Origin: Amphiscolops sp. MND2022
Taxonomy: Eukaryota
Direction: 5' to 3'
DNA length: 64,000 nt
Assembly (NCBI GenBank): GCA_964187785.1
Contig: OZ076421.1
Location: 42,966,001-43,030,000 of the forward strand
The notes under the pieces were generated by a model. The model was not told the origin of the DNA. It saw nothing but the letters and a program-made list of their open reading frames with translations, and did not search any database. The translations under genes were made by a program, and so were the position numbers. Position 1 is the stretch's first letter. Every line of letters starts with the position of its first letter. Of this stretch, positions 13,375-61,500 are shown piece by piece.

Positions 13375-14896
13375 CGACCTGAAAAAGTGAGATCGAGTGT
13401 TAGAACAAAGAGATTTAGTTGGAAAGCTAAAAAAGACCTAGCTACTACCGCAATTGGGTGTAGATATATTTGGTATACGTCGTCGAAGGGCATGCCTCGG
13501 CATGCCCACAGACGGTGGGCGTTGGTAACAGTATGTGGCGGTATAGTCTCAATTTGGTAGCCAGTAATGTCAATCGGTCACATTGTGGATGCAACAAATT
13601 GCCTATTGGAGAAGACGGAAAATTGGAGCATACTTTTAGAACCTACACCGTTGTGTAATGTACATGTAACTAAATGCAATCCGTTGTTATCTACTCTCAA
13701 ACAGGGAGATACAAGAAACACTTTCAAATGTATAGTAGCGGAGAAAAAGTCCGAACGCATCCCCTTCAATTTTTTTCCCGATGCTCCAAATGACTTGAAA
13801 GAAGGGAACGAATAATTTAATAAATGCTTCAACGGTATTGTTCCAATACGTTTAACAAGAGCAGTCGACAGAAAGTTTCACGAAACCAAAGGAAAACCGA
13901 TTAAACATGCGATTTAAACTAGCAGAAGAAAATTCAGCAATGACCTCATCGAAAGATTTTTCAATCACAGTGTAGTCGTTGAACTGTGGAATAGATTAAG
14001 ACATGGTAACCTCGTTCAAGGGCTTCAGATAACCAACAGTAAGCAAGAGCCATAGGCAAAGTGTTGAAAAAGTACTCGCAGTTACAAGCGACTGCTGATC
14101 CTATGAATAGTAATGTGCACATCACGGCTGACCAATCACACTTACAAGAATAACTCCGTGTAACGTACAAAGGACACAAAGAACATAGTCGATTTTCAGT
14201 GTTCTGTAGCAGTCGTACGCCAAATTTCCTGTTTTTGAATGGAACTCCCGTTGGCAAGTTCACTAGCCTCAGTGGATAATCATCATTGCTCTCTCGCAAG
14301 CATTTGTCACATCGGTCACGGTTGTTGCAAAATTGATTGTATCCTACAAAATTCTCTCAAAGTTCTTTATCCAAAGCAGTTACGAGGCAGGTTGATTTAG
14401 GGGTATTATATTATCATAACAAGAATCAAGTACCGGTTGCTCATCGTCCGGTCATTAGACAAAACCCACATCAATCCACTTGTCTACATGTTCACTGCTA
14501 CACTTTTTTCAGCTGTACAAACTTGAGACTGAACGATAAAAACATTTTCGCTCTCTGCTTGACACAAGTTAGATGGATTAAACTGGCCACGTCTATTGCG
14601 TTTATATCGATTCCGTTTTGGACCCATGAAATGCTAGCAGTCGAGATATTCAATTAATCTTAAAATGGCATTTACTTGTTATTCCATCAATGAATTACGC
14701 CATGTACGATATACATAAAAGGTGATTTTGTAAAACAAACAGAATTAATCACCTGAATTCAATAGCTACCAAAGTGATATGACATCTATATGCTATGAAT
14801 ATCAGCTGAAAACAAAAGCGGAACCAAGTGAACAAAAAAATTTCTTTTGCCATTATATAAAGAACAACAATATATTTAGATGACCAGCAAGATTTT

Positions 14897-15328
14897 TTAA
14901 ATGCGTGGTAGATCTTTCTCAGTTTTTCTCTGGCGACGAACACCGTCATACTCAGGATTAAAGATGTTTGTTTTGAAATCCATATAGATCTCGTTCTCTG
15001 TTTTTGTCTGTTGACGAACTCCTTCATACTGAGGATGAAATATTTTGGGTTTAGTGGCCACATAGTCACTGGGTAGAAACACCGTATTCTTATGAAATAA
15101 ATCCTTCCTTTGCATTATACGATTCATGAACAATTTGGCTTCTTCATGATGGAAGAATTTGATAATTCCTTTGGCTCCGTCGCATTTTCCTGCTACTGGA
15201 CCAGCACGACTGACAGAAACACAAACACGTTTTTCATCTCGAAATTTGAGTGAATGTCGTATAAAGTTAATGATCCTTTTGCTGGAATAGGTCCCGCCTT
15301 GCAATTTAATAGTTCTGTAGTACTTCAT
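14897..15328 (-). CDS. Small accessory ORF (143 aa) of the transposon block, possibly RRM-like
   Basis: Uninterrupted ORF from ATG 15328 with a strong acceptor (tttttttgtttatag) 6 nt upstream. KGIIKFFHHEEAKLFM resembles an RNP1-helix segment. The C-terminal IF(H/N)P(Q/E)Y(E/D)GVR motif is duplicated. Confidence 0.4.
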   Translation of the reverse strand: MKYYRTIKLQGGTYSSKRIINFIRHSLKFRDEKRVCVSVSRAGPVAGKCDGAKGIIKFFHHEEAKLFMNRIMQRKDLFHKNTVFLPSDYVATKPKIFHPQYEGVRQQTKTENEIYMDFKTNIFNPEYDGVRRQRKTEKDLPRI

Positions 15329-15947
15329 CACTACCTATAAACAAAAAAATACGGCGAATTGAGAGTAACAATAGAAGGTTCTTGCATTTAACATTACCAC
15401 TATTTTAAACAATCTTTTCAAACAAAACAAGAAACGAGTCGACGAAACACCCGAAAAAATTGTGGAAGGAACGAAAAAGGCACGAAATAGAATGCTGAAA
15501 CCTGCAATGAAAACGGCAGAAAAACTAGCATACCAGTAGAACACCGTAGCGAGTATCATTCACTAAACATTACGAGAAAAATAGGAGTAAGTAATGACTA
15601 CTGCGACGAAGAATGATGTGCGCTTATTAAATCACGTAACATTTTCGTAGGAAATAACCATTGTTTACTGGCGGGAAGTAAAAGAAAAAGCGCAATGAAA
15701 AACATTCTCCAATGAGACACTATTATCAACCCCAAAACAATAAAATACACATGATAAAGAATGAAAAAAGAGATAGGATAATAACATCATTAGTACGAAA
15801 ACTTAATCAAGTTTTATTAAATCAATAAAATACATGCAATAACAAAGTTCAAAGAGATATCAACAAAAAAATGTATGCCATATATTCAATAGCAGTTGTA
15901 ATTGGAACCAAATGCTCATAATATAACTGAAAGCTTGATTAAAAAAT

Positions 15948-16020
15948 AAAGGTTGCAGTAGAGGATTGAACTCGCACCAATGAACTCCAAGCCTGATGTA
16001 ATATCCACTGTGTCAACTTG
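15948..16020 (-). pseudogene. Degenerate tRNA-like segment
   Basis: Minus strand has A-box-like ttgacacagtgg and B-box-like gagttcaatcc; the stems are poorly paired. Confidence 0.45.
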
Positions 16021-16195
16021 CATATTGAAACAAATAATATTAATCTCACTTGTTTCGAAGACTTGCTGTTATTAACGCTTAATACGCAATTCAACAGTAG
16101 AAATTGAATTGTGTCAAATTAAAATACGAGAAATCAAAGGAACACTCTCATCGCATTAAATTTGTGCATAACTCGTTATCAAAGAATATATTAAG

Positions 16196-16265
16196 CTATG
16201 CGGGAGAATCGAACTCACAATATCTGCTTCACAGGCTGACGCCAAACCTCTAAACCAAGTGTCGG
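16196..16265 (-). pseudogene. Degenerate tRNA-like segment (His-GUG-like loop)
   Basis: Minus strand reads ttggtttagagg (A box), tcagc-ctgtgaa-gcaga (anticodon arm with a mismatch), gagttcgattc (B box). Confidence 0.5.
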
Positions 16266-19741: not shown

Positions 19742-19944
19742 AGCAAGCTCTGAAATACATGGAGCAAGATGTTACATCACGAAGCAGGACAATAACAAAA
19801 GTTCGAATAATGACAGCTATCACTATAGATGTTGGTTAAATCGAACAAAAAGAAAACGGTTTGGAAGACTTGATTTTTAAACAGAGCATACAAGAAGGAC
19901 GAAACAGTTACAAACATGTACTCAACACTCAACTCATTATAGCG

Positions 19945-22402: not shown

Positions 22403-23528
22403 TTAGACATTACAAATCGTCATCACTTGGAACACTTCGTTGTAGACAGCACCTGCAAGTGCAGCAGATCTTTTCGATTTACGCGTCGAAGTTTTTCCTA
22501 CGGCGTGAATTGGTTGCTTGTTCTTTTTACTGATATTTGCACAAGAACCAGAATTTGGTATCTTCTGACCAAGAGCGATATGGCCTACATTGTCAGCAGT
22601 AAGTGATTCTCTGTCAGCAGGAGCAATGGATTCAATGTTACCATCAGTTAGTGATGCTTTGAAATTGTCATCAATGGAGTTTTCTTGGAGAGAGAACGTG
22701 GCTTTCCGCGATTTAGCAAAAGAACATGAAGTAGAAGGCTCTTCTGATTTGCGATCCAAGGACTGAGTTGGCTCATCTTCTATTGGTAAGTTAGCTATAA
22801 GATCATCAAGGGAACTACCGCCGAGCGACAGCATAGACTTGGTGTCAGATATTTCAGTACGTTTCATCACTTGTAGTTGTTTTCTTCTCTTGAATTTCTT
22901 TCCAGCAGATATTTGAGAGGTTGGAGGATTTGTAATGACTCTTTGGATATGGTTTATATCTCTGCAGTTGCCTTCAGATGATTGCAGGTGAGGACTGAGC
23001 ATTGGATGCATGAAAAGCTGAAGTAAAAACCCTTGGTGAAGCAGAAAATGACTTCATAGCAGGTGGGTATAGGACTCGTGGAGACACTGTGTGAGTTGTG
23101 TTGGAAAGTTTCTTCGCAGGAAACTGAAGAAGCTCCGTTGTTTCTCAATTTTTGCGCGCTTTTCGTGAGAAGCAAATTATGCTGTCTTGAAGAATCGCGA
23201 TGGATGTTTCTCGCGTTGGACAGGTTTTTCAAGGCTTCACATAATTGGCACGAGAACGCTCAGTTGACTGGACTGTAGCAAGCAAATCGTTGCGCTCTTT
23301 GCTAATTTTCCCAGCTATTTTTTTCGCATGAAGAAGGACCTTGTCAATGGCGGCCACCAAGGTTTTCTCACCATCATACAGCCGAGGGACCACTTTATTC
23401 GAGACAGAAGGTCGTTCCGCGATGGCATAAGAGAAGGAAGCTTTGACAGAAAGCAGTATGTCATGAATAGTTTCGATTTCTTCGAGAGAATTGTTCAGTA
23501 GAGGCAACAATTTCCAATCAGTAGACAT
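22403..23528 (-). pseudogene. Frameshifted low-complexity ORF, unknown function (upstream-most ORF of the block)
   Basis: ATG 23528 (MSTDWKLLPLLNNSLEEIE...) has a tttttttcag acceptor 8 nt upstream. It continues through ORF-track pieces 22954-23232 and 22403-23011. No recognisable domain. Confidence 0.4.
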
Positions 23529-23576
23529 TTGGTTCACTGAAAAAAAGCCAATGAAAAGGCTGACGCTTGAAATAGG

Positions 23577-29603: not shown

Positions 29604-30720
29604 CATTTGGAGACCTGAAGACGATTTGCTTCTAATCGACGCCGCTTTGCAGACCAGCGATTTGTTCGCAGTTTTCTGTGCAGTCAAGTTTTCAACCCAC
29701 TTCACACTGAGAGAAGTCCAAGAACGCTGGGAGTCCCTGTTGTATGATTGCAACATTTCCAAAACTGCATTGGATCGAATCGGGAAACTTCCTATTGACA
29801 TCCGGAGACGTATTTTGAGCAAAGCGCTTTTCTCAGATTCCGAGGAACAAATTCTGATGGACATAAATTCAAACAACTTGCCATCGCTTGAAACCTTTCA
29901 GTCAACTTTGTTGAAAAACAAAAACACCTTTCATGCCTCTCGTACGGCGAAAGCTTTGAGGAAACATTGGTTGTTACTCAGACGTTATCAGCTACTATCA
30001 AATCAGGGCGTGAACAACCAGCTTAATCAGGAACAGTTCAGTGACGCAGAGGAAAGAATGGAAGAATCTGCGGTCGAAAGTGTGAACAAACCACAGTTCA
30101 ACGATCCTGTCATTTTGAACGAAATTGATTTAGCAGCCAGTAGGGCTTGCGAGGAAATCAAAGTTCTTGAAACCGAGATCCCAAGATGGCAATTTTTACT
30201 CACCCAAACCTCGGCAGGTCATAAAATGTCGGATTTCGACAGCCAGACTTTCGCAATACTCAGAGGGCGTTCCATCAGGTATTTCATGAAGAAACGTACC
30301 ATCACTATTGGGCGCACCTGTAAAGGACATTCGGCCGATGTTGATCTGAGTCTAGAAGGACCTGCCCATAAGATATCCAGGATCCAAGCAATAATCAAGA
30401 TAATCGATAGCGGAGTTTTTGTCTTCCAAAACCAAGGAAAGCGTCCTGTTTTCATCGACGGGCGTCCCGTGTTGCCAGGATCGAAAAGAAAGCTATTTGA
30501 CAACAGTGTGATAATTATTTGCAAACTGGCGTTACTGCTTTTGACAAATGAGAATTTGATATCCAAACTGCAAGACAATTTCAATGAAAAGATTCTACAA
30601 CAGTCTGCTACGTCTCAGAAGGCTACCGTGTCTCAGAAAGATGGGCCAAAAGCAGTTTCAGCCGAGGCACCGTCTTCGCAGAGTACTGTTGAGAACGAAG
30701 TGAAAGCAACTAATTTTTGA
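29604..30720 (+). CDS. MCRS1: Microspherule protein 1 (MCRS1/MSP58), MCRS_N plus FHA domain; 5' end unresolved
   Basis: WRPEDDLLLI..., VKFSTHFTLREVQERWESLLYD, FHASRTAKALRKHWLLLRRYQLL, FSDAEE, and FHA domain AILRGRSIRYFMKKRTITIGR...VDLSLEGPAHKISRIQAII. There is no in-frame ATG before the conserved block; likely acceptor at 29601-29603. Confidence 0.95.
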
Positions 30721-33725: not shown

Positions 33726-34445
33726 TGTTATTTAACACCGTTTTTAAACTACCTCAAAAATCGCAGTTTTTCGTTTTGGGAACAGATGTTTGTTGCATTT
33801 TTGGAGTGTTTTCCAATGTTTTCCAATATTGACGTCAAATATCATTTTGAAGCTCGTGAGACGCTATTTATGATTCAATGACTCAAATTTCAGCAAAGCA
33901 TCTTCAGCAGCGGCGAGTATGGCGAGAAATTTCAACCCTAGGTCTCACCTATGGGAAACTACGGGCGCAGTTGGGCATGAAAAAGCCGGGAAACTAGCGT
34001 TTCTGTTCAACGAATTGAACAAAAACTGAATGTCATGTTTTTTGTATCAGCTACGAAATAAATTACAAAGTTTTTTTTCGATAAAATACTGTTAGTTCAT
34101 CTTTGAAAATAACACATTACTAACCCTGCATGAGACGAAAAATTATTTTTCGACTAATGGATTTTTTGTGTTTCCAATTGGTGAAATTCGCGTAACCCTC
34201 GGTGTATCTTTCGGCGCTGAGAATCTGATAAAATTTGACCGTATCCGGATATTATGAAATTTGACCAGCTGATGAACTCCGTGAATATTGAACTATTAAA
34301 TAGTTTCTGCTTTGTGCGGTAATATTTTATAAAGCTTGTACATTTAGTTACTAGCTAATTATTTTTTTATTTTGTAATTTGTACGCCCTCGGGTAACAAA
34401 TTGATAAATTTTTCATTCATTCTCTCATTGATTGTAGATTGTACC

Positions 34446-40400: not shown

Positions 40401-43400
40401 ATTTTCACGTTCCTAAAATCGCAAGTAATCTTGGGCAATTTGGCGGAAGTCATCAAGAAAATTGCTGACGCGCTACTGGTTCTTATCCCAAGTTCGGCGT
40501 GCTTGGAACGAATTTTCAGCACCCTGGGATTCGTCCACAACCAAAAGCGAAATCGACTCTCAATTGAAAAAGCCAACGAACTTACTTTCTGTCTTCGCTT
40601 ACTACAATAAACTCAGTTGTTAGGTCGTCTAGGCGTTGGAAGTATTCATGTGATAGATCTAGATTTTGAACATGTTTAAAACAAAAAAACAATGTTTTAA
40701 ACGTTTTAAACACGATTTTTTCAAAATCTTGTTTTTCCGAACCTTGGTTCGATTGCAGAAACGTAATAATAATAATAATAAATTAATTTATCTGGCAACA
40801 TTACAAAACATCATCAAATTAAAACACCAAAAGAATATATCGATGCCACAAAAGACTCCCAAAAGGCGGTGGCCCGGTTGAAGGGAGCCTTTTGATAATT
40901 GCGAATTTTAGAACAGTTATTTCTGGAACATAAGTTGACAAAAAAGAAAAACGGAACATCAGAAAAAAAACAATTCAAGGACGTTTTTGGTGGGTTTCAA
41001 TGCGCGTGTAAAACAGTGAGAGATCATGTGCTATCAATTTTAGGCACACACACTCTACAGTGTATTAAGACAGCTGGAAAAAAACCGAAAGTGATGATGA
41101 AGTTCCACTGAAATTCCCTGAAAACTCGCTTCTCGTACCCCCTCTGATATAGTTTCAATTGATGGCTTCTGCGCACCCGATGCCCGACTTTACAGGCCCA
41201 GGAGTCTTCAATGCTCTGTGGGAGCAAAGATTCAAACACCTGAGAACTCTAACGCGGGATTTTTTGCATCAGGTGGCAGAAGCTTCTGGGGTATGATAGT
41301 AAATACAGTAGGGGGCTTTTATAACGACCCTGAGGGGCAGTTGATTTTAATGTCGGTATAAAAACCGTCGTTATAAAGATAGTCGTTGCAAGCATTTGCT
41401 GTATGACAGGAACTTGGAAAATGGTCGTTATAAACGCTCGTCGTTATAAAGCACTCCGTTATAAACAACCCCTACTGTACTATGATACCCCCTTGTTGGA
41501 TGTATGGCTAAGCAAAACAAAACAGAAAGGATCAATATCGGCTTAGCACTTACACTTGGCTCCGCAAAAATAACGAGACTACATTGGCATTTATTATTCA
41601 AATTAAACAAAATGACACTTCCAAAGAAGAAGAAGAACCAATTGCTTTTTAACTGACGGCTGTGGAAAACTGACAAATTGGAACTTGAATTTATTTGAAG
41701 GGCTTTTTAATTATTTTTATTATTAATTCGCCGGCGCTCTCCTCCGTCGATAGAAGAGATAATTGCACGCGGGGGTTACCGAGACAGAAAGCTGCTCTTT
41801 TGGAAAGCGCTATCACTCGTAATTTTACTTCGACTCGTGAATTTACAACGGTTTATTATCAATTCACGCGTTCAAATGTTGTCAAAAAGTATACTTCTCA
41901 ATTCTCTGAATTTTAATGGGCAATTTAAATTTCTCCATTTAACTTGAGCCTCTTTAAATCAATTTTAAGGTTGAATTATTATTTGAATTAATTATAAATT
42001 TCGATATGTAAATGTATATGGAATCAATTAAATGTTTAAATTTAACTTTCAAAATGTAAAGGTAGATCACTGTCGTTGAAAAAGGCATACCCAAAAACTC
42101 GTGGTGTCCATAAGTAGAGTGACGTCACCTTTCTAAGTGGTGTGTTTTTCAGCCAATCCCAAGTCGGGTCTCTTGCAGGCCTCACTGACTAGTTTGTTCG
42201 TGGTCTGCATCACGTGGATGGCGTTCTCCTCGGACCCCCGCGAGCAGTGCAACGCCAGTGACGACACTGAGCAGTGGGTCATCATCGCACTCGCTCTCTT
42301 TCTAGCCGACTTCACTATCCTCGTTGCCAGGTATTCCATTGTCTCTCACAAGCTTTCAACTCTTATTTGCAAATCTGTTATTTTCATCCATTATTTCCAT
42401 ATGGAAGTCAAATTCATTTTTCAGCCGCATTTTTTCCAGATTTTTCACTTTTACAATTTTATACTCATAATTGACACTGCAACGAGGCTCTGCAGCTTGG
42501 AGCGTAATTGACACCTTCACATGAAATTTTCCCGAATTTGACAGCTGTGATATGAGCTCAAAAGTGATATGGGCTCTTGAAAGAAGAAAGTTTATTTTTG
42601 AAATTTTGATACTATCCAAGTTTTGTAGAATTTGTTTTCTCGTCGGCTTGAGTATCCGCAGTTCAGCGACAAAAGCATTCGCTTTTTACCATACTTTTCA
42701 AATCAAGGGATTTCAAGTTTCTAGAGTATCTGAAATGAACCAAAAACAAGGCAAAACTTGTTAAAAATTTCTATTTAAAAATTTGAACATTTTTCGTTGT
42801 TATCGGTTACTTTCGAGACTAGATGTTGAATCGCCACCGCAGTCATAACTAAAAACCAATAATTAAAATCCTATTTCTCTACGGTATCTTTACAACGTTT
42901 TATTCCACGAAAAGTTCGTGTAACCCTTGGAGCACCATGCTCTTCGAATACTCATTGAGCCCACTTTTTGCACATGACGAAGTCAATGTGCATTGCAGTC
43001 CAGCTAAGAAAGTTTTTTTTTCCACAATAGTCAACTCCATAATGAGCGCCTTTTAGACAAAAGCCAAAACCCCTGAGAGATTCGAACCTGCAGCCTCCCG
43101 GTTGCACGGCATAAGTGTTGACCACTGTGCCATAGGGACGTTATTGAACAAAGTTGAACTGTTGAATATATACGCATGCGATTAAAATAATATATATACG
43201 CATATTAAAATAATGTCTTCGTCATGTGTTGCGAAGCACCTCTTCGCCTCTGTGTTAAATAGAAAACCTTATGGTTGGATTTGCTCATTGGTCACATAGT
43301 GAAACTTCATTTCCTTGATGAAGCCTACTTGGAACGGTAGTCGATCTCAGTATTTGAAACCGCTGCTGTGAAATATAGGATAATACCTTGTCCTGTGTTT

Positions 43401-46400
43401 ATACCAGGGTTGTGATGATTTAAATCAATTGATTTAAATCAATGATTTAAATCCGATTTTAATCGTGGAATAAAAATCAAAAAAATCATTGACCCAGTTA
43501 TTGTCCTTTAGTCACGGATGACAGAAGAGTTGATAGGCGCGCTCAATCATGTTCAAACAAAAATCGCAAGACTCTGGCGGTATTTATAACACATTAATCA
43601 ATAGTTTTGTTATAGAAACTGTAATTTTCACGTAGCAAGTTCGTTTTACTAGAGTGCCTGGATCACATGTTCACATTGCGCATTCTACAATTCACATTAT
43701 TCACATCATTCACATTTGGATTCGTTCACTCCAGCTCCCGAAACCGATTGGGAGTCGAAAAATGCGGCAAACTTGTTTTCTGTTTCCGTGTTTTGAATCA
43801 ATGATTGATATTATGTATTGATATTAATTGATTCTTTAACAAAAAATTTCGTTTTCAATAAAAATCAAAAAAATCAATTAAATCAAGCAAAAATAATAAA
43901 AATCGGATTTAAATCAAGCAAGAATAAAAATCGGATTTTTTCACAACCCTGGTTTATACATGGATTCTTAAATGGAATATTTTTTTGAGAAAATGTACCT
44001 GGGAGTTTTCGTTCCCACTTCAGTCTTTCATTGTAGCATATCTGGATTAATAAATTAGTAAAAGTTGCTGTATCCTTAATCCCGATATTTCATTTATATC
44101 ATATTGTGAAAATCATGAAGTGTCAATTTTGAAAATTACCGTCATCATATTGAACGGTTTTTGGTGGAAGAATATTCTATAACTGAAAAATCTCTTTAAC
44201 AAGACATCTGAAAACATTTAAACTTGTGCTGAAGCTCACTCATTCGTTGTAAGAATTTGGTGCTCCTTTCAAGGTCATTTCTTTATATACAAAGGCCCAT
44301 ACAATGTTCTATCGTGCTCTGCAAACTACTCTATTGAGTTCATAATCGGTGTTTTATTGCATATTTCAATATTGTTCCAGTGGCTCGTCTCGCAGCAGTG
44401 ACAGTGCCACCAACTATGCCTCGGACGAGGGAGACCGAACAGGGGGACAAGCAGTGGTGGACGACGAAGAGGACGAGGTCTCCTACAGCCACTCCCTGTT
44501 CCACGTGGCCATGGCCACTGCCTGTCTCTTCGTCATGATGACTCTCACCCAGTGGGACAGGTACCAAACAACAACTTGAATGACAATTATAAACAAGCCG
44601 GTAACGGCACAAGTCGGCGCCATATCCAATGTAGAAAATGCATCTAAAAATGCAGAAAAGTCTTGTAGTACTGAAAACCTGACCCTCAAGAATTACTTTG
44701 GACGCAAATTTTGTGAAATTTCGTGGAAAAATCGATTGTTATGCGAGAAATGAAAAAAAGTTACATCCGAACTTTGAAAACGTTACATCCGAACTTTGAA
44801 AACGTTATATTCGAACTTTGAAAACGTTATATCCGAGTACCCTTTTGGTCCCGTTGATGTAAAATAAGTATTCTCAGATGATGTAAAATACGTTGCTTGT
44901 ATGCAAGATGAATACGTTGCAAGATGAAAATTGTAAGAAAAGTGGACCACACAGAGTGAGATTGTCAGCCGAAAAAAACTACCCACTGTAAAGACAAATG
45001 GAGCTTGCTCTGGTTGAATATTTTAGCACTAGAACATGAACAATCGCCTCGGGCATCTTTTAGGGAAAAAATTGTACTACCTCAATACAAATACTTTCGA
45101 TGATATAGGCCTTAAGAAACCAAATGGGCTAAAAAGTCGCATTTGATCAATGAATGTTTTTTGTCAAAAAAGTACTAAGTAGCGCAACTTTAGCGAGATT
45201 AAGGTAGTTCCACCAGAAGGTTCTAGGAGTGCACCATAAAAAGTATTTACCCATCATGCCAGTCCCTCGAATGGTTCCGGAGATATTAGTAGCCAACTGG
45301 CAGGAAATGGGATTTCAAACTCAACCGACCAAATTGTTTAACGAAATAAGACTGATGCATCCTGCTCTGGTTAAAAACTCGAACGCAAGAACATGGACAA
45401 ATGCTCGAGACATCTTTCAAAGGAAGGATTTTTACTGCATCGTGAAAACTCCTGATGATATACGCCTTAGAAAACCAAATAGACTAAAAAGTCGCATTTG
45501 ATCAATAAACATTTTTCGTCAAAAATTGCACTAAGCCGCAAACAAAGTTAGCGAGATGGAAGCTGTTCCTCGAGAAGGTCGTGGGGATGCACCATGAAAT
45601 GATATTTACCCGTCATACCAGTAGCTCGAATGGTTCAGGAGAACAGTAGCGAACTGATTACAAACTAGTGTTTAGCTTCGACCTATCAAGTTTTCTAATC
45701 CGGAAAAGTCTTTTGGAACCCCCATTGACAACTTTTTTACTGAAAAAAAACGAAACGTCATCATAGAGGACGAGAATTAAGGGCGCCAAATCGAAAAAGT
45801 TGGTCAATCTCACGTTTTGGCAGAAAAAAGTGGAAATTGTCTTTGAAAATCGAATGACCATAGGCTTCGCTCCGCCTAATAATCCGTGTATACCAGTGAT
45901 GACCAATATAATGGACGATTAAATTCATTTCCAAGTAAAGAATCCGTTATAATTTTCTAAATTTAATAAACGATTGAAAGCCATTAGAGGAAACCATTAT
46001 AATTATCTTCAATGAAAATATATTGCACTGCACGTTCTACCACAAATCGAAACTTTTCTGTGATTTCCTGAAACCGCCAACTCCTGGTAATATTTCAAGT
46101 GCGTATAAACTATGCTTTAATTGTGGCAAGAATAACCAATCAATGATTTTTTGGTTGCGATTGATTTTGAAACAATTCTAAAAATGAATACCTCAATTTT
46201 GAATTTTCTATTTAAAAAGTTTCTTGGCCGTCACTGGTTCAAATCACAATCGGCGGCCCACTTGGGTCTTTAGCCTACCAAAAGTGAAATAATTCAATTG
46301 TGTTGTATTTTGGGAAGCGGGTGTTTCGGAGGAACACTAATTATTTTTATTCGTCAGCTGGAATATTACTCAAATTTTAATGCATATGAAGAGCATTCCA

Positions 46401-49400
46401 ATTTAGTTGAATACCGAAGCGGCGTTGACAACCAAAGAACAAGACGGGAACGTCTCAAGTCAGCGCTATACCTAAGCTCTAAAAGTTTTTGAAATATGCT
46501 CAGGACGTTATGAAAAACTCACAAAGTTCCCAAATACGCTTCAGAACTTCGGATATAGCGTGCTGGAACACATGGGGGCGCTTGCTCTCGAACCTCCGCC
46601 TCCTCCTTGGTAAAACGCAATATTAAATATAAATTTTTGTGGGCGGAAAATAAGTGACTGAAATAGTCAAATAACTAAAATAGCCAAGTGGATGGAGATC
46701 GTGGCGATTTTGCGAAATTTGGAAAAAACGCAACACAGATTATGATTTTCCTCCCCAATTATATATGGGCGAAAAATAAAAATAGGAATGAACCTTCAAG
46801 GTTGGAATAAAACTGGTGTAAAACAAAGATATATATCACGAGTACTTAACCCCCGGGGGATATTTGCAAAAATTAAAAAAAAAATTCGTTAAAAACTTTC
46901 AATGGTTAATATCTCCACAACTAAACTAAAAGCATATTGAGAAGCTAGTTTAATTAGGGTTTAATAATCAAGAAACGAATCATTAGATCGATTTCTTAGT
47001 AGACTGGCTGTCGGTCACATTGATACTTCAGAGATTTCAATGTAATGTTTTGAAGAAACCAAATTTTTCTTTTTTTTGAAGAGCATTTTTGAGAAACCAA
47101 ATATAATTCGAATATAACGTTGAAAATTCTGATTGTATTGGAAAAATTGGTGGATGTACAGTAGCGTTCTAAAATATTGCAACCTCTTCGACGGTTTTCT
47201 AGGCAAATAATATCAAATATCTCAGACTCTAGGGTAGCTAGGAAAGTAAATAAGGTTTCAATCGAAAGGTAATTTGACAAGCTTTCTCACAAAAGTTTGT
47301 TTATTTTCATTCTCATAACCAAAGATGCCTCAAACCTGCGCTAAAGATAGAGCAAATATTATAACTTTATATTGCAAGAAAATCAGTTTATCACAGATTT
47401 CCAAAATACTGAGCATTCATAAAAGCACCGTTTCACGTGTTATTCGGAGATTTCTGGAAGGAGGAACAATTCAGCGCAAATTCAGCCCCGGAAGACCCCG
47501 AAAATGTACCAAATTTACTGAAAAAACCGTTGTTCGGAGCTGTAAAAAAGACCCTTTTTAACAGCTTCTGAAATTGCCCAGACTTTACCAATTATGATCG
47601 CACCTTCTACGGTCCGCAAGATTTTGTGTAAATACAACCTGAAGGCAAAAGTTTACAACAAAAATCTCATTATTTCCCACATTAATCGGGTGAAAAGGGT
47701 CACTTTTTGCAGAACAAAATTATATCAAAATTCGGCAAAAAATGGACTAAACTGGTGGAATGTCGTTTTTTCTGACGAAACGATGATTGAATTACAACCT
47801 ACTCGTCGGATACTTGTCAGAAAACCACCTAACTTAGGTTTTCATCCGTTATTTACGCCAAAATTCAAAAAAGTGCCAGCAAAAAAATTGATGATCTGGG
47901 GATGTGTCAGATCGAATGGCGAAAGATTGATTTTTCCCATCAAAAACAAAGTCAACGCTGATGTTTACTTCGACTGTCTAAAAAACAAGGTTCTACCCTT
48001 TCTGAATCTCCATGAAGTTTTTCAACAGGACAACGCACCGGCTCATAAAGCAGAAAAAACGATGGTTTTTTTTCAAGAGAATGCCTTCACATTACTGGAA
48101 AACTGGCCCCCACAATCTCCGGACTTAAATATTATCGAAAATTTGTGGCACATTTTGAAGAAAAATGTTATTCGAAGAAGCCCTGAAACGTTGGAACAAC
48201 TTTGGACTTTCACGGAGGAAGAATTTTACCGAATTCCAAACTTCTACATAAAAACACTTTATGCATCTATTCCGAGACGAATACAAGGAATTTTGAAAAA
48301 TAAAGGATACCCAACGAAATATTAGACTGTTAATAACGTTTTCTTACTTTAACGCTTTTTTGTACGATGTATTTTTTGTGGCCCAATTTAATTTTGAACT
48401 TTCGTTTTCATTTTCAAAGAGTTGCATTATTTTAGAACGCTACTGTATATTGACAAAACCTAATATCAGAGAAGGAGAATTTTGAAGTGCCAAAAAAATC
48501 GAAAGGGGTCCTTTTGTCTCTTCCGGTTTTGTATGTTGCGTTATAAAAGTGAAAAAATTAAAGGGGGACCCTTTGCAATAACTTAGATGCGTTTCCGAAT
48601 TATTCGTTTAGTTGAACAAACTGAACAAAAATTGCGTCGCATTCGAGTCTGTTTTACTGAAAATCAGAAAAACGAGTGACTGTAATAGTCGGGCTCTTTT
48701 ATTATATAAAAGCGCCGAATAAAAACGGCAGAAAACAGAATCTATTGGATTCCAAAATATGTGAAGCAAATTGTTTTTCAAGTGAATCTAGAGAAGAGTT
48801 ATCAAACTTTCGGAAGCTACTCAAAAGTTTAATCAACCCAATATCCATTTGAAATGAATAGAGAATCACTTTAAGTGAATATTGGTGAATAAAAACAAAC
48901 GTAGCTGTTGTTGTTCGTGACGGTTAAAGTTTATTTTCTCGCTGCCTTACTGAAAGATTATATTTTCAGCGATTGATTCATTCAACTTGGAATTTATATC
49001 ATATGAACTTAAATTGTATTGCCTCGTTTTCTTTCGTTCGCAGTTAGAGCTCACTTGAAGTTCCTTTAGAACTTCACTTGAAGCTCACTTTAGATATTCT
49101 TTCACTCAGTGCGGAACTTTAAAGCGACGCTATGGTTAGGATACGACTCACTTTTAGCATTGATTCACTTAATGTGTAAATTGCTTCATTTAAAGTAAAA
49201 CTGATGTATTAGGACACAGAGAGCTCTGTGGCTACCTTCATAGCAGTGAATACAGGAGGTCAGTATCACTGACTAATGTTCAGCCTTTTCAGCCCAATGG
49301 ACATCGATGCCAACACGACGAAAATCGATCTGCAGCATTCCAAGGCCTCCAAGTGGGTCAAAATCAGCAGCACTTGGGTCTGTTTTGTAGCCTACGTCTG

Positions 49401-49446
49401 GGTCCTTTTTGCCCCCATGATTTTCCCTGATCGCGATTTCAATTGA
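34446..49446 (+). CDS. SERINC: Serine incorporator (SERINC/TDE family), 8 exons, 429 aa
   Basis: join(34446-34646, 35873-36057, 38188-38270, 38348-38441, 38947-39161, 42153-42330, 44381-44560, 49293-49446) = 1290 nt, all GT-AG with consistent phases. Motifs: Cys-rich N-terminus, [86 protein letters not shown]. Confidence 0.96.
37077..37592. mobile_element. piggyBac-type MITE in SERINC intron 2
   Basis: TTAA on both sides (37073-76, 37593-96); TIRs ccccaatcgacct/aggttcattgggg match at 11 of 13. Confidence 0.8.
37593..38084. repeat. 122-bp minisatellite, 4 near-identical copies
   Basis: ttaacatctagaaattgaactg starts at 37593, 37715, 37837 and 37959. Confidence 0.97.
39207..39692 (-). mobile_element. 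HINE family 1 copy in SERINC intron 5
   Basis: aacaagccgggaacggcataagtcgacgcc...agcgccgactaa. Confidence 0.8.
39897..40196 (+). mobile_element. HINE family 2 (DINE-1-like) copy with internal tRNA-derived segment
   Basis: T-run, then a perfect 12-bp asymmetric IR cacatgacgaag (39903) / cttcgtcatgtg (40157), 3' hairpin GCGAAGC-ACC-GCTTCGC (40171-87), end ctctgtgtt. Confidence 0.85.
40293..40746 (+). mobile_element. Non-autonomous hAT element retaining a transposase dimerisation-domain fragment
   Basis: 8-bp TSD GTTCGATT on both sides; TIRs cagggttcg/cgaaccttg; [39 protein letters not shown]. Confidence 0.9.
41306..41477. mobile_element. Short Tc1/mariner-type MITE
   Basis: TA-cagtagggg...cccctactg-TA; internal gtcgttataaa repeats. 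Confidence 0.75.
42965..43256 (+). mobile_element. HINE family 2 copy in SERINC intron 6
   Basis: Closely similar to 39897-40196, with the same IRs, hairpin and tRNA-like segment. Confidence 0.85.
43405..43951. mobile_element. hAT MITE
   Basis: 8-bp TSD GTTTATAC on both sides; TIRs cagggttgtga/tcacaaccctg; subterminal gatttaaatc repeats. Confidence 0.9.
44760..44835. repeat. 22-bp tandem repeat (~3.5 copies)
   Basis: gtta(c/t)at(c/t)cgaactttgaaaac repeated. Confidence 0.85.
45005..45660. repeat. Old diverged tandem duplication, period ~357 bp
   Basis: gctctggtt at 45007 and 45364; ctaaaaagtcgcatttgatcaat occurs in both copies. Confidence 0.7.
47159..48445 (+). mobile_element. Tc1-family DNA transposon (1287 bp) in SERINC intron 7
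   Basis: TA on both sides; 25-bp TIRs cagtagcgttctaaaat(a/t)... with 1 mismatch. Confidence 0.95.
47325..48325 (+). CDS. Tc1-like transposase, DD35E, split by a single frameshift at 47552-47561
   Basis: HTH N-terminus plus GRPRK; [38 protein letters not shown] -1 shift at CCCTTTTTA restores [10 protein letters not shown] and gives a 333-aa protein. Confidence 0.9.
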
Positions 49447-50585
49447 GCTCCAACTTCGATATCTGGATAGAAGCTAGAAACTGTGCTAAATTTAATTCGA
49501 ATACATAAAATCATCTTTTCTCCAAATATCAACACTTTTTCGAATCTTTTGATAATTTGTGTCACCTCACCTTTGTGGTGTAAGCTCTCTTGAAAACCGA
49601 AGCTCTCTTGATTACATCAATTGCCGCCCTAAACTGAAAAAGCATATGACGAAATTTGAAACTCTAGTCTGAGCCCGTGTGATAGTAAAGTTGAATAGTT
49701 GAAAAGAGATAGGTACTTCTATCTGTTTGAAATACTGGATATATTGAACTCAAAATCAGACTATGAATGAAAAGTTGTCTTCTTGAGAAAAATTTGATTC
49801 TCTCGTTTGATGTGAATAATTTATTTGCTGTAACTTTAGATTAGTCGTTCCTTACAAAAATATTTTCCCTCTGCTATTTTTGAGTCGTGATGTTTTGATT
49901 TTTAAGCCATCCAACCAGCTTTTATTGAAGTTTGTCATTTTTCCCAAAAAATGCTATCATTCAGCCAATCCCGCTTCTCAATTTAATTTGTGTAGTTACT
50001 CCTGTAGATTAATCGCTTATTAAATTTTAATTTAATTATTTAGTTATAAAGCCATCTGTTTTCTCAATGTTGATTATGTTTGCAGAATCCACAGCTAGTG
50101 TCACCCAAGTTTTCAATCGTATCAAATTCGAATTCCTAGGATGTCATCAAACTTCACGTTCGAGCAAATTTGATAAAGTCTCGAATTAACTTAACTGATC
50201 ATTGCACGTCATGTCAGTCTTGAGGTTTCTATTTCGCATCTATGAAAATCTAGGAAGATTTTTCACCGCTATTTTGATGCTCTCAAGTTCACTATGTTTT
50301 GTCATTTTCGGCCCCATAGTTTATTGTGTAGGGCGAGAAAAATCACCATCCGTGTAGCGTTCTTTTCAAAACTCTGCCAAATCTCCACTTTATTGGTCTA
50401 TTCAGTATTTGGGTATTTTGGCAGACAAGAGGTCGTGGGTTTGAAGCCGGGCTGTAGTCTCAAGTTTTTATTACGGAAAATATCCCGATGCTTAGCGGGC
50501 GTCTTGTTATATTTACCACCGTGGTTCATCTCCTGTTGTAGCCAGTAGTATCAGTAAGTTTACTGCTTTGAACTTCAGATTCAAA

Positions 50586-52866
50586 ATGATGTCATTTGAC
50601 GACACAGCTGGGACCACAGTTGAAACAGTCTGGTCGCTAGCAACGAAAGAAGTGGAGGCTCAAAATGAGCGTAAAAAGGAAGAAAGACTTCTATCCGAAG
50701 AGCGAACGATGATAGTGTCTGGAACAAAACAGGCCGGAAAAACATCTTTGTTGCTCAAATTTCTGGAAAAGAATGAAGAACGCGTGAAGCCATCTGTTGC
50801 CCTGGAGTATACATTCGCAAGGAGACAGAGAATGAACTCATTGGAAAAAGATATTGTGCATTTATGGGAGCTTGCGGGAGGTACTAACCTAACAGATTTA
50901 ACCGACGCTGTTATAACAGCTGATAACCTACCTGGACTTTCACTTGTGATAATAATTGACCTTTCTCAGCCCGGAACTCTGTGGGTCACATTAGAGAAGC
51001 TTTTGAACGACACGAAGGAGAAAATTGATAAACTAACTGGCAGTAATAAAGAGTTGAGGAATGTTCTGGAAAAGTCGAAAAATGAGAGAATCCAAACATT
51101 TGCCAAGAATTTCGACCATTCGAATATATTCCCGATACCGCTGTTAATCGTGGGGTCTAAATATGACTTGTACGCGAACTTGGATTCCGTTGAGAAGAAA
51201 ATGATAGCGAGGACTCTGAGATTTGTGGCCCATTACTATGCTGCTCATTTGGTTTTTGTGTCTGAACGAGTGGCGTCAACACTGAGATACTTCAAAGCTT
51301 TTTTCAACAGCCTCGCCTTCAATACAGGTATTATACATGTGATGTCGTTAATTTTTCTAGGCGTTGGAAATTTCAGGTTTGATCGTAGTCTTGTATCAAT
51401 TTTAGGTATTTGGGTGTCCGGACATGACGCCCAATAATTATGGGGACGGTAAATAACGTCTAAACGTTTTGAGAGTAAACAGTCCGAAAAAAAACTAATC
51501 ATGGTTCACCACGGCCACATACCTCTAGTGCCCTAAACGCAGGCCCGAAACGGAACGACGTGCTATTGGTCGTAATGTCCGAACATCGATTCAAACAGCG
51601 CTGAAATTTCATATCAATTTCGATTCGAGAAAACGTCTTTTTTAGCCGGCGCTCTTCTTTAGAAAACAGTCGACTATAGTCATGGCTTTTCGTCAGTGTT
51701 TTTTTCAAGACCACCTGAACTGACCAAAATACTTCTACCAAAACTTCTACAAAATTTTCAGAAGACGCCAAAATGTACCTGTTGACCCAAGGAACTGAAC
51801 CAAAAAGGTTTCCCGCGTAACATACAATACCGGACGAGACCAAATGGTCCATTTTTTCGGCACTGTGCGACTTTTATCCCCACGAAAGGCCCCCTTCAAT
51901 TTTTTGGAGTTTTGCAACAGAATGGATGTTGAAAAATCCCAAAGGGTCCTTCCTTTCAGTTTTTTTCGGCATTGTGAGACTTTTTTTCCAAATTTTTTTT
52001 CATAAAAGTAGTCCCAATTCACCAATACTGGAAATTTTGAAGTCCTTTTGCTATTTTTGAGCCTTGGATATGGCGCCGACTTGGGCCGTTCCCGGCTTGT
52101 TAAACCAAGGTACAAGTATGTTTCATTGGAAGATGGTTGGTTGTCTTCAACTTTTGTCGCATTCCCAAAGCGCCGAAGATTTGCCAAATATCAGAAGCAT
52201 TCAAGAACGCTTGTTGATTATAACATGCTGTTGGTGAGACAGGAAAAAGTATGAATCTGACTGACAATCAGTCAGCTAAGAAATCGATCTAATACATTGC
52301 ACTCTCCGTTTCATGATTCCTGAACCCTAATTAAACTAGCTTCTCTAATAATCTTAGTTGAGATATTAACCATTGGAAGTTTTTAATGAACTTTTTGAAT
52401 TTTTGCAAATATGTCCGGTGTTAAGCTTACTAGTACTCGTGATGTATATTTTTGTTTTACACCAGTCCTATTCCAACCTAGAAGGTTCATTCTTGTTTTT
52501 ACCTCCATGTTTTCTATTTTTTTTTCAGGAATGCAGAAAGTGATTTCATTTGACGAGAACAAACCTATTGTGATCAGCGCCGGCAACGATGACTCACTGG
52601 CCATAGGTGGTCCCCTCACTCCTGATGGCTCAGTAATCAAGGATGTATACTCCTGGACAGACTGGAAGAAACACTTCTGCACTTTCTTCGCCCAGAAAAG
52701 TCTAGATCCTGACCAAAATAAAACAACCGACGACCCGGGACTCGATCCTAAGTACAAGGAGTCTGTGATAGACCAGCTGAAGAAGCAAAAGTTCATGGAA
52801 ATCGAAAATCTGCGGCGCAAGTTCAGAAAAGAGGCAAACACTATGTACAAAGTTGGATCTCATTAG
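50586..52866 (+). CDS. DYNC2LI1: Cytoplasmic dynein 2 light intermediate chain 1 (D2LIC), 2 exons, 359 aa
   Basis: join(50586-51327, 52529-52866) = 1080 nt, GT-AG, phase 1. Motifs GTKQAGKTS, KPSVALEYTFARR, KDIVHLWELAGG, FPIPLLIVGSKYD, RTLRFVAHYYAA, KPIVISAGNDD, DPKYKESVID. Confidence 0.94.
51638..52101 (+). mobile_element. HINE family 1 copy in the DYNC2LI1 intron
   Basis: tttttagccggcgc...ggcgccgacttgggccgttcccggcttgtt. Confidence 0.8.
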
Positions 52867-58170: not shown

Positions 58171-58552
58171 CCCCTGTTTTCATTGCCTCTAATTAAATCT
58201 AAAGAACAAACAAAATAATAATTCTCTGGTAATGCCATGTTTAACACTTTCACACCTAACAAATTCCAATTGAAATCTACTTAAATTGTGAATTGTGGCA
58301 TTACTGTATACCAAATAATTTCTTTAAGAAGCAATTAGTCAATAAATTGTTTCAAAATGAAAAACTCAATTATTTAATATTATTTAATTGAAGTGAGGAG
58401 CTTGGAGTTGGTTGCGGAAAAGAGCCAGCAAGTCCCATGACTGGGCGCTTTTGACTGTGTATTTTGGGCGCTTTTGTCCGGCAACCGAACAGCAAAATCG
58501 TCAAAAAATATCATTGCCAAGGGTACCATATATTGCCGATTCCAGAGAGAAA

Positions 58553-61500
58553 ATGGTGGTGAGGACCAAAATAGCCGGCACTTTTCTCCAGTTGTCGGAT
58601 TCGTTAAAATCAGTTGCCAAACTGGATTTGTCGCATCTGAGAATCCTTCCAAACTTCATTACAGCCGAAGAGGAGTCCAAAATATTAGAAGAAACTGACA
58701 AGCGACTAGTTAGACAGAAGTACCAGAGAGATCATTGGGATGATGCCATCGTAGGATACAGGCAGAGACTTTGGATCATGGGAGATTTTTCGTCGTGTCA
58801 CCCAGAAGTAGAGCAAACCGAGGGTTGTTGGATTCGGTTTTGCGGAAAACCAGTCTAACACAACTCGCCGAATGCAACTCGTCGAAATTAAAGCGCGGAA
58901 AACTGGTCGAAAATTAAGTCGTCGAATAATAATTGAGTGCAAACGTGTCGAATACTTACAGGTTACCCGCAGGGACTCCCCGGGGCTAATAATGCATAAT
59001 TTTTACATAATTGATGCGTGAAATTTTTACATAATATAGCTTTTTTTGATGATTTAATGGCTTGAAATTTTTCTTTTTCAAAAATTTTCCAGTGTAATAA
59101 TTTAGAACTTCAGAACACAGTACGATCACAACGTTAACATCATATTTGCCTGAGATTATTTTCTGCACTTGCGACGAGTTTTCCACGAGTTGCTTTTCGA
59201 CAAGTTTTCTGCCTAGTTTTTTCGACCATTTGTTTTTGACAAGTTTTACTACAGTAGTGATATTATTAAAAGCAACAAAAGGCAAATCTCAAAATCGAAT
59301 ATCTCTGAAACAGCAGCGAATTTTGAAAAATGATAAAAGTGAAAGTTTCTTAGATTTTTATCTAGTTTACAAATATGTTTGTTTGAAGGTTATGCGATGA
59401 AAATTGTAGAAGTTACGATAGGCTATTTTTAGCCAAATTTAGGCCAAAATTGAGGTTTTTCTCACTTTTGACATACTTTTGCTCAAAATTTTTGAAAAAT
59501 TTTATGTTCAATTGGCACCCCTGATTTAACTGAAGCCCCTGATATGTTTTGATTAAAAAATCATTCTAAAATCGCAAAGAAAATACGCTGTAAAATTAAG
59601 TTTTTTTCGAAAATACATGTATTAAGATACGATTTTGAAATCTAGCCACTTAAAACAAGCTCGTACTAAAACAATTTACAATATTTTCGAGAAAAAGTTA
59701 TATTGTCAGATTCGAAATGTTTGGGAGAATTTTTCTGTCAAAATTATTTTGAAATCAAAAAATTGTACGTGGGTCAAAAATTCAAAAAACTAAAAATTGA
59801 TGTTTTGGAAATCGCTCTCGACCAATGAAATCAGCGCGTGAGACGTTATTTAGCCAATGAGATTTGTTTATTTGCTCTCTTTCCGCGTGCTTTGTTGCTT
59901 TTAATAATATCACTACTGTAGATTCGTTGGGTGCAAACGTGACTCATTATCGGTTTGGTGCGGCTAGCAGTTTAAAAGGTCTATGACATCTCTTCCATAC
60001 TCGGGAAACATTGTGAACGCTTAAAAAATGAAACTAATTGTAGGTTTTGTATAAGTGTGTTAAGAAAAGATGTCTATCTTACTACTTTAAGAGAATGCCC
60101 GAGAAACTTCGAAAAGTAGAGCCTGATACCCAATTTTTTTTCGAATCCTCAATCGGAATTTTTTTGAACCCCATAAAGCACAGACCTCTTGCTCAACTGA
60201 AGTCTCTGCGTGTAGAGAGTTTGAAAGCGATAGATGGAGTGAAGAGACATCGAATGTGATCAACAGAATCAGAGAAACAGCCCAGTTTGAGAACAGGCCC
60301 CGCCATCTGGTTCACGTTCTGGACATCGAGGCTGACGGTTATATCAAACCCCACATTGATAGTTCAAGGTTGTCTCAGCAGTGTTCTGTGTTAAGTAAAG
60401 TCTACAAAAGTACTAGGATAATGTTTGTTCATCTCCCTTGCCCAGTCCCCTAAGAGGCTGCAGATAGACACATCGCTAACCAGCAAAAGATGAGTCATCC
60501 ATTAGCCCCATGTTTTACGGGGAAGGGCTGTGTCGAATTTAGCAGTTTTCCGGGTACAACTCAATTAGGCCATTCTTGAGGCTCATTGAAAATACCCCTT
60601 CAAAAATGTGCTTAAAAGTTCCACCAAATACGCCGATTCAATGACTTGTTGTCACATTATTCAACTGATTTTTTAGTCGGCGCTTCATGAAGTGAACGGG
60701 ACTCTGCTAGTGACTTTTTTCAATCCACACGAACTGACCAAAATAGTTCTACAGAGCTCTACGAAACTTTAAGTTGTCAAATTGGACCATTTCGCTCAAG
60801 GAACTGAAATATAAAAGTTGTTCCTTTTTTTCAGCGTAACACAATACCGGGCGAGACGAAAATTTCAATTTTTTCGGCATTTTGATGCTTTGCGACAGAA
60901 TGGATGTTGGAAAATCCCAAAGGTTCCCCCTTCTTTTAGCGTGCCACTTCCGTCCAACTTATGGGATTTTTTTCGGGTACGGTAAAAGAATACTTGACAC
61001 TGAAGTTCTTTTGCCATTTTTGAGCCTTAGATATGGCGCCGACTTATGCCCTTCCCGGCTTGTTCTAGCTACTCTCGAAATGGGCATCACAAAAATTTTC
61101 TGTTTTTGACATTTGAAAAGGAAACAGCAAGTTTTACTTACGAATTACACCTACATGTACCTCTTAATCATAAAAATTATATTCCAATTACTCTACTCAA
61201 ACGAACTTGTTTCAAGCCATATGAAGAATCAAATCTACTTATTGAAGATGAGTGAAATTATTTTTGCTCCAGATTTATTCTTCGATTCGATTCTAAACTT
61301 GAAATACCATTTTTTTGATAGATACATTTTTAATTACTAATGCCGAAGTCGGATGTCAACTACGTTTTATAGGCCCACTTTTTATAGACACTGTTGTAAT
61401 CGCAATGAAAAACGCCAAAATTGAAAGTGAGTAAAATTTGCCCAAGTAATAGGAACAAGCCGGGACCGGCCCAAGTCGGCGCCATATCCAAGGCTCAAAA

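What the first reader, a model, noticed from the sequence alone, without database searches (positions are those of the whole stretch)
14620..58560. YAG acceptor 6-8 nt before the ATG in 3 host genes and 4 transposon ORFs: possible SL trans-splicing
Seen: SERINC tag|attgtacc-ATG34446 (8 nt), DYNC2LI1 cag|attcaaa-ATG50586 (7), ALKBH7 cag|agagaaa-ATG58553 (7). On the minus strand: cag|tgaaccaa-ATG23528 (8), cag|agcttgct-ATG19741 (8), tag|gtagtg-ATG15328 (6), tag|catttc-ATG14627 (6); most have pyrimidine tracts. Established: in animals with spliced-leader trans-splicing, unpaired acceptors often lie just upstream of the start codon and resolve polycistronic RNAs. Inference: this genome trans-splices. 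The four same-strand host genes may be operon-like (SERINC stop to DYNC2LI1 start is only ~1.1 kb). Caveats: some transposon ATGs were chosen after the fact, and the Tc1 ATG does not fit the pattern.
Basis: partly seen in the sequence, partly recalled or inferred. Interest (0 to 1): 0.72.

Follow-up and report, generated by a model that had tools for sequence, protein, structure and literature searches.

The report
Splice acceptors before start codons, acoel
The window comes from an acoel worm already published to add a common 31-base leader to about 30% of its messenger RNAs, so acceptors just before the start codons of three genes fit a known mechanism; no RNA data could be reached to show that they are used.

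Summary
All seven YAG-N6-8-ATG contexts are in the sequence as written. The general inference, that this genome trans-splices, is correct but already published. The 32-base leader reported for Symsagittifera roscoffensis (PMC9911081; 30.2% of genes trans-spliced) occurs 2107 times in the window's own genome and never in the control. I also found the SL RNA gene itself: more than 1286 copies in 904-bp tandem units with 5S rRNA. Other windows of this genome were flagged for the same pattern earlier in the scan.

Site by site, the evidence is uneven.
- All three host ATGs are the true conserved starts.
- The DYNC2LI1 acceptor keeps its position (6-7 nt before the ATG) in five acoel species while the upstream sequence diverges, so it is a real 3' splice site.
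- The element site at 23528 is also kept in 5 of 6 diverged copies.
- The TAGs at 15328 and 14627 are simply the in-frame stop codons that bound those ORFs.
- The site at 19741 is undecided.

About 8.5% of all ATGs in the window show the motif by chance. No RNA run was reachable (the four runs found are DNA), so leader addition at these sites, as opposed to an ordinary 5'UTR intron, is inferred and not shown. The operon idea is not supported: the gene spacings are 1.1, 3.7 and 5.7 kb.

The parts
34435..34445 (+). TAG acceptor (34435-34437) plus the 8 nt before the SERINC start codon at 34446; candidate SL acceptor, first exon base 34438
   Evidence: Sequence. The ATG aligns 1:1 with residue 1 of solved SERINC3/TMS1d. 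The C3 paralogue has ttgtag 4 nt before its ATG. TTGTAG does not fit the YTNCAG motif reported for M. lignano SL acceptors. No RNA evidence.
34446..49446 (+). SERINC gene, at least 7 coding exons, stop at 49444-49446; a Tc1/mariner transposase ORF (47594-48325) lies in its last intron
   Evidence: Exon-by-exon PF03348 matches; Pfam on ORFs; sequence.
50576..50585 (+). CAG acceptor (50576-50578) plus the 7 nt before the DYNC2LI1 start codon at 50586; best-supported site, first exon base 50579
   Evidence: A YAG followed by A sits 6-7 nt before the ATG in five acoel species, while the upstream sequence is not alignable. It fits YTNCAG. DNA contigs read through it, as expected for DNA.
50586..52866 (+). 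DYNC2LI1 gene: exon 1 to about 51331, intron, exon 2 from about 52526 to 52866
   Evidence: PF05783. A spliced RNA contig of a relative, L014, maps at 50567-51331 and 52526-52904. tblastn of P0039 and P0003.
58543..58552 (+). CAG acceptor (58543-58545) plus the 7 nt before the ALKBH7 start codon at 58553; candidate SL acceptor, first exon base 58546
   Evidence: Sequence. Exon 1 matches ALKBH7 structures 4QKB/4QKD. In the one relative found (L031) the nearest good acceptor is 52 nt upstream, not 6-8.
23529..23539 (-). tttttttcag acceptor and the 8 nt before the ATG at 23528, the start of ORF1 of a Helentron-linked repeat family
   Evidence: The family's called proteins start at this Met. Five of six copies, in 3 of 4 diverged lineages, keep a pyrimidine tract plus YAG 8-9 nt before the ATG. 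At least 47 copies in the genome.
22406..23528 (-). Decayed copy of ORF1 (343-415 aa when intact), broken here into two ORFs (23528-23232 and 23011-22406)
   Evidence: P0043 (343 aa) covers both pieces as one frame. ORF map. The 'cag N6 ATG' at 23011 is therefore internal and chance.
19742..19752 (-). tatttcag acceptor-like site 8 nt before the ATG at 19741 (154-aa ORF of a family with at least 150 copies); status undecided
   Evidence: Sequence. Family size, and longer open frames (up to 441 aa) in other copies. Copies could not be fetched.
15329..15337 (-). TAG 6 nt before the ATG at 15328: the in-frame stop codon bounding the ORF, most likely not an acceptor
   Evidence: No Pfam family.
14628..14636 (-). 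TAG 6 nt before the ATG at 14627: in-frame stop codon, weak pyrimidine tract (8 of 15), short 41-codon ORF; most likely chance
29604..30720 (+). MCRS1 large exon, entered through an ordinary internal cis acceptor (ccgtttttcag at 29603); its start codon lies in an unidentified upstream exon, so it cannot be scored for the pattern
   Evidence: PF13325 plus FHA; sequence.

Best explanation
The window is from the acoel Symsagittifera roscoffensis or a very close relative. In this animal a 31-nt spliced leader (SL), donated by a small SL RNA, is trans-spliced onto roughly 30% of mRNAs.

The YAGs 7-8 nt upstream of the SERINC, DYNC2LI1 and ALKBH7 start codons are 3' splice sites at the outron/first-exon boundary. 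The SL would be joined at 34438, 50579 and 58546. That would remove the variable upstream RNA and give each mRNA a 38-39 nt 5'UTR made of the leader plus 7-8 nt.

Shown here:
- the SL and SL RNA genes are in this genome;
- the three ATGs are the true starts;
- the DYNC2LI1 acceptor is conserved across acoels.

Inferred: that the partner of these acceptors is the SL rather than an upstream cis exon.

Among the element sites, 23528 is a conserved acceptor in front of ORF1 of a Helentron-linked family, with an unknown splicing partner. Sites 15328 and 14627 are stop codons seen by chance. Site 19741 is open.
For: - The published SL matches the own genome 2107 times, against 0 in the control.
- SL RNA genes carry a GTAAGT donor, two hairpins and an Sm-like site, arrayed with 5S rRNA.
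- The true starts are confirmed.
- Across five acoel species an AG|A sits 6-7 nt before the DYNC2LI1 ATG, with diverged upstream sequence.
- All three host exons begin with A. The published 32-mer ends in an A that the SL gene does not encode.
- The DYNC2LI1 and ALKBH7 sites fit the YTNCAG motif of SL acceptors in M. lignano, where trans-spliced genes are enriched for conserved genes.
- Three of three scorable host genes show the motif, against an 8.5% background.
Against: - No RNA evidence exists for any site. The only runs found are DNA, and no S. roscoffensis transcript contig was in the protein collection.
- An RNA contig of a relative runs unspliced through the DYNC2LI1 acceptor.
- The ALKBH7 relative lacks an acceptor at 6-8 nt.
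- The SERINC site is TAG with a mediocre pyrimidine tract.
- There are no SL-fused retrocopies of the three genes.
- The 264-kb ORF-start sample shows no enrichment, though it is underpowered.
- Only about 30% of genes are trans-spliced, so the prior for any one gene is modest.
Confidence: 0.6

Rival explanations
1. The acceptors are the 3' ends of ordinary cis-spliced 5'UTR introns. A promoter-proximal non-coding exon further upstream is joined to them, and no leader is involved.
For: Conservation of the DYNC2LI1 acceptor and of the ORF1 acceptor fits a cis intron equally well. About 70% of genes in this species are not trans-spliced. The relative's RNA contig holds 131 nt of upstream sequence that could be a retained 5'UTR intron.
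Against: No upstream exon or paired donor could be identified. Within 1 kb upstream, the only consensus GTRAGT is 25 nt from the DYNC2LI1 acceptor, which is too close to be its partner. An acceptor within 10 nt of the ATG in a conserved gene of an SL-using animal is the typical SL arrangement (Lasda and Blumenthal 2011, from my own knowledge).
Confidence: 0.25
2. The pattern is mostly coincidence. YAG 6-8 nt before an ATG is frequent, and the reader selected fitting ATGs after the fact.
For: 8-9% of all ATGs in the window fit. Two element TAGs are the in-frame stops that bound the ORF. Another apparent case, at 23011, is internal to the intact ORF. There is no enrichment in 264 kb.
Against: The position of the DYNC2LI1 site is conserved in five species, and that of the ORF1 site in 3 of 4 lineages. 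Three of three true host starts fit. Chance explains some sites, not all.
Confidence: 0.1
3. MCRS1, SERINC, DYNC2LI1 and ALKBH7 form an SL-resolved operon transcribed as one precursor.
For: All four genes are on the same strand. SERINC stop to DYNC2LI1 acceptor is 1132 nt, with a possible ATTAAA signal at 50019 that leaves about 540 nt. That is borderline under the 1-kb repeat-adjusted rule used for M. lignano.
Against: The other gaps are about 3.7 and 5.7 kb and hold repeats. The operon mode in M. lignano and C. elegans is about 100 nt. Operons are not reported for this species (0 mentions). No RNA was available.
Confidence: 0.08

Closest known systems
SL trans-splicing of Symsagittifera roscoffensis (Martinez et al. 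2022, G3, PMC9911081)
   Same: The same leader sequence is present in the window's genome. The SL RNA gene has a donor and an Sm-like site. [quoted passage not shown]
   Different: The paper gives genome-wide numbers only. Whether these three genes are among its 10,433 trans-spliced genes could not be looked up. The published 32-mer carries a final A that the SL gene here does not encode (gene: AAATAG|GTAAGT).
SL trans-splicing and operons in Macrostomum lignano (PMC8629364) and C. elegans
   Same: Same YTNCAG-type acceptor, same enrichment in conserved genes, and short distance from acceptor to ATG.
   Different: Operons there have spacers of about 100 nt. Here the spacers are 1.1-5.7 kb, so operon membership is not supported.
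Cis-spliced 5'UTR introns ending close to the start codon
   Same: A conserved pyrimidine tract plus YAG a few bases before the ATG.
   Different: This needs an upstream exon and donor, and none was identified here. Only RNA data can separate the two readings.

Membership tests
SL trans-splice acceptor (outron/first-exon boundary) | The organism has an SL RNA gene: a leader exon followed by a GT donor, stem-loops and an Sm-binding site | tested here: met
   More than 1286 copies of ...AAATAG|GTAAGT, with two hairpins and AAUUUUUG, in 904-bp units with 5S rRNA. The leader is identical to the published one.
SL trans-splice acceptor (outron/first-exon boundary) | A 3' splice site (pyrimidine tract plus YAG) upstream of the first coding exon, at the true start of the gene | tested here: met
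   Contexts. True starts confirmed. Position conserved for DYNC2LI1.
SL trans-splice acceptor (outron/first-exon boundary) | The acceptor is unpaired: no cis donor or exon upstream in the same transcript | tested here: inconclusive
   No consensus GTRAGT within 1 kb except one 25 nt away. Weak donors and distant exons cannot be excluded without RNA.
SL trans-splice acceptor (outron/first-exon boundary) | Transcripts carry the leader joined exactly at the acceptor | not testable with these tools
   The runs found are DNA. No transcript contig of this species was found. There are no SL-fused retrocopies.
SL-resolved operon | Same-strand neighbours separated by a short spacer (mode about 100 nt; under 1 kb repeat-adjusted in M. 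lignano) | tested here: not met
   1132 nt, about 3.7 kb and about 5.7 kb. Only the first is borderline under the loosest published rule.
SL-resolved operon | A polycistronic precursor RNA spans the genes | not testable with these tools
   No RNA run was reachable.

The most novel reading that the evidence does not exclude
ORF1 of a Helentron-linked repeat family keeps a 3' splice acceptor 8-9 nt before its start codon across diverged lineages. This may be because the element's genes are expressed by SL trans-splicing out of host read-through transcripts: a DNA element without its own promoter hitch-hiking on the leader, as this genome's LINE RNAs are reported to be leader-capped.
Probability: 0.2. 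Interest if true: 0.5.

Novelty: already known. Interest (0 to 1): 0.2.

Why it matters
It shows that a reader of raw sequence can infer SL trans-splicing from acceptor placement alone. For this species, however, the mechanism, the leader and its prevalence are already published, so the general inference adds nothing new.

Three things are modestly useful:
- the DYNC2LI1 acceptor is fixed in position across five acoels, which hints that leader use at individual genes is old within Acoela;
- a rolling-circle-element ORF keeps a start-proximal acceptor;
- the SL RNA genes sit in a large tandem array with 5S rRNA.

Each of these could be settled quickly with the species' existing RNA-seq.

Tried and rejected
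- **RNA runs.** The look-up of sequencing runs returned four runs of unknown kind. Laid on 47450-53400, they show even depth over intron and spacer, so they are DNA. There is therefore no test of leader addition.
- **Transcript contigs through the protein collection.** The only spliced DYNC2LI1 contig (L014) belongs to another species, 83-87% identical in nucleotides. ALKBH7 gave one relative. SERINC exon 1 gave nothing.
- **Genomic fossils.** I searched the own genome for the SL tail fused to the sequence after each acceptor. There were no hits for the three host genes or for the two element families. This is uninformative, because such retrocopies are rare.
- **Genome-wide AG-to-ATG profile.** The resulting ORF-start profile is flat, but the sample is dominated by repeat-element ORFs, so it neither supports nor refutes enrichment at host genes.
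- **False enrichment in the window.** An apparent excess (7 of 33 ORFs of at least 100 aa) came largely from in-frame TAG stops and a duplicated repeat.
- **Other blanks.** Rfam finds no RNA gene in the window, and there is no SL copy in the window. The Atlas look-ups for the two element ORFs gave nothing.
- **MCRS1.** It could not be scored, because its start exon was not found.
Full report
**Observation.** The seven contexts are in the window exactly as quoted:
- tag|attgtacc-ATG at 34446
- cag|attcaaa-ATG at 50586
- cag|agagaaa-ATG at 58553
- on the minus strand, cag|tgaaccaa-ATG at 23528
- cag|agcttgct-ATG at 19741
- tag|gtagtg-ATG at 15328
- tag|catttc-ATG at 14627

Pyrimidine content of the 15 nt before each YAG is 8-12 of 15. 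The motif is common: 8-9% of the roughly 2000 ATGs in the window have a YAG 6-8 nt upstream, and 30% have one within 1-15 nt.

**Which organism, and is trans-splicing known there?** Earlier notes of this scan named the acoel Symsagittifera roscoffensis, and I tested that lead.
- The genome paper for the species (PMC9911081) reports the leader GCCTAATTGTTGTGATAAACTTATTAAATAGA and 10,433 SL trans-spliced genes (30.2%).
- That 32-mer occurs 2107 times (up to 2 mismatches, at least 100 exact) in the window's own 1.07-Gb genome, and never in the reversed control. It does not occur in the window.
- The pattern ...GATAAACTTATTAAATAG followed by GT occurs 1286 times, mostly in a tandem array of 904-bp units on contig C1 at about 16.2-16.4 Mb.
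- Each unit holds a canonical SL RNA gene: a 31-nt exon ending AAATAG, the donor GTAAGT inside the first hairpin, a second hairpin, then AAUUUUUG. Each unit also holds a 5S rRNA gene.

Both were already published (the paper's Supplementary Fig. 2).

**Host genes.** Four are recognisable on the + strand.
- MCRS1 (PF13325 and FHA) is entered at 29604 through an internal cis acceptor. Its start exon was not found, so it cannot be scored.
- SERINC runs from 34446 to the stop at 49444-49446 in at least 7 exons. Its first 68 residues align 1:1 with residues 1-68 of solved SERINC3 and TMS1d.
- DYNC2LI1 (PF05783) has two coding exons, 50586 to about 51331 and about 52526 to 52866. This follows from a spliced RNA contig of a related species.
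- ALKBH7 exon 1 matches the human ALKBH7 structures.

All three scorable host genes thus carry the motif in front of their true start.

**Conservation.** I fetched the orthologous DYNC2LI1 loci of four other acoels, among them Convolutriloba macropyga. In all five species a pyrimidine tract plus YAG followed by A sits 6-7 nt before the ATG, although the upstream sequence is otherwise unalignable. This makes 50576-50578 a real, selected 3' splice site.
- For ALKBH7, the single relative found has its nearest good acceptor 52 nt upstream.
- For SERINC, no orthologue was found. The paralogue on C3 has ttgtag 4 nt before its ATG.

**Trans or cis?** This could not be decided.
- The only runs that hold the locus are DNA, with even depth across intron and spacer.
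- No transcript contig of this species was in the protein collection.
- The relative's RNA contig reads unspliced through the acceptor. That fits an outron as well as a retained intron.
- SL-fused retrocopies of the three genes are absent.

Several points favour the leader:
- The animal uses an SL on about 30% of its genes.
- In Macrostomum lignano, SL-spliced genes are enriched for conserved ones, and their acceptor motif is YTNCAG (PMC8629364). The DYNC2LI1 and ALKBH7 sites fit that motif.
- All three exons begin with A. This matches the extra A at the end of the published 32-mer, which the SL gene does not encode.

I put SL addition at about 0.6 overall (DYNC2LI1 highest, SERINC and ALKBH7 lower) and a cis 5'UTR intron at about 0.25.

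**Element sites.**
- The TAGs 6 nt before the ATGs at 15328 and 14627 are in frame. They are the stop codons that delimit those ORFs, which is expected whenever one picks the first ATG of an ORF. The same artefact, together with a duplicated repeat at 55810/56356, produced an apparent enrichment among long ORFs in the window.
- The ATG at 23528 is different. A library-wide search shows that relatives at 52-81% identity start at this very Met. The intact protein is one frame of 343-415 aa, broken in the window copy.
- Five of six copies fetched, representing 3 of 4 diverged lineages, keep a pyrimidine tract plus YAG 8-9 nt before the ATG. One copy has CAC instead.
- In one copy the next gene has a JAB domain. 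That links the family to the Helentron noted earlier in this window.
- No SL-fused fossils of this family or of the 19741 family were found.
- The 19741 ORF belongs to a family of at least 150 copies with longer frames elsewhere. Its acceptor could not be tested, because no more genome sequence could be fetched.

**Operon.** The distances are 1132 nt from the SERINC stop to the DYNC2LI1 acceptor, with only an ATTAAA at 50019 as a candidate poly(A) signal; about 3.7 kb from MCRS1 to SERINC; and about 5.7 kb from DYNC2LI1 to ALKBH7, with repeats in between. These are far from the 100-nt mode of known SL operons. The first pair is borderline under the loosest published rule. I rate co-transcription at about 0.08.

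**Genome-wide test.** Only 200 kb beyond the window could be fetched. CAG 6-8 nt before the first ATG of ORFs of at least 100 aa is 4.4%, against 4.0% for all ATGs. That sample is dominated by repeat-element ORFs, so the test is underpowered and settles nothing.

**Verdict.** The sequence observation is real but is partly chance and partly an artefact of ORF definition. The core inference is right and already known. The assignment of individual sites remains inferred. Other windows of this genome had already been flagged for the same pattern by the scan.

Noticed in passing
G000:C1 about 16.23-16.42 Mb (loci L017-L026): SL RNA genes lie in a tandem array of 904-bp units, each unit also carrying a 5S rRNA gene. 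There are more than 1286 SL-gene-like copies genome-wide. The species' genome paper does not mention the 5S linkage.
   Followed up: partly
L019:1488-1520 and the published leader: The SL gene reads ...AAATAG|GTAAGT, so the leader exon is 31 nt. The published 32-mer ends in an extra A that must come from the acceptor exons. All three host exons here start with A.
   Followed up: partly
L001, L004, L005 (about 1501-1570): Some genomic leader copies are followed directly by the reverse complement of the leader's own 3' half (AAATATTTAATAAGTTTATCAC), forming a hairpin-like palindrome, rather than by a donor or an mRNA body.
   Followed up: no
window 3140-8100, minus strand: About five tandem copies, with a period of about 994 bp, of an internal piece of a Pif1-type helicase (PIF1 and Pif1 2B domains). 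The same three ORFs (121, 94 and 86 aa) repeat in each unit.
   Followed up: partly
window 50421-50484: A very high-copy repeat with a tRNA T-arm-like sequence (ggtcgtgggtttgaagcc) lies about 100 nt upstream of the DYNC2LI1 acceptor. Summed contig depth is 60,000-150,000 in DNA runs, against 20-85 for unique sequence. It looks like a SINE fragment. ARAGORN calls no tRNA.
   Followed up: partly
window 51629-52225 and 48445-48842: Extremely high-copy repeats lie in the DYNC2LI1 intron (summed depth up to about 2 million) and in the last SERINC intron. DNA contigs join 48725 to 52101 on opposite strands, which suggests inverted copies of one repeat.
   Followed up: no
window 50554-50559: A perfect consensus donor, GTAAGT, lies only 25 nt before the DYNC2LI1 acceptor. 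It is absent from the relatives and too close to be its splicing partner.
   Followed up: partly
window 37592-38084: A 122-bp unit repeated 4 times at 99% identity inside a SERINC intron.
   Followed up: no
window 55810-56946: Two adjacent copies, 546 bp apart, of a repeat whose ORFs start with identical sequence (ttttagtagaaa|ATGTGCCCGACT). No Pfam family.
   Followed up: no
G000:C13:43104656-43104687: An exact copy of the 32-base leader lies about 75 kb downstream of the window's end. Whether it is an SL gene or a retrocopy was not checked.
   Followed up: no
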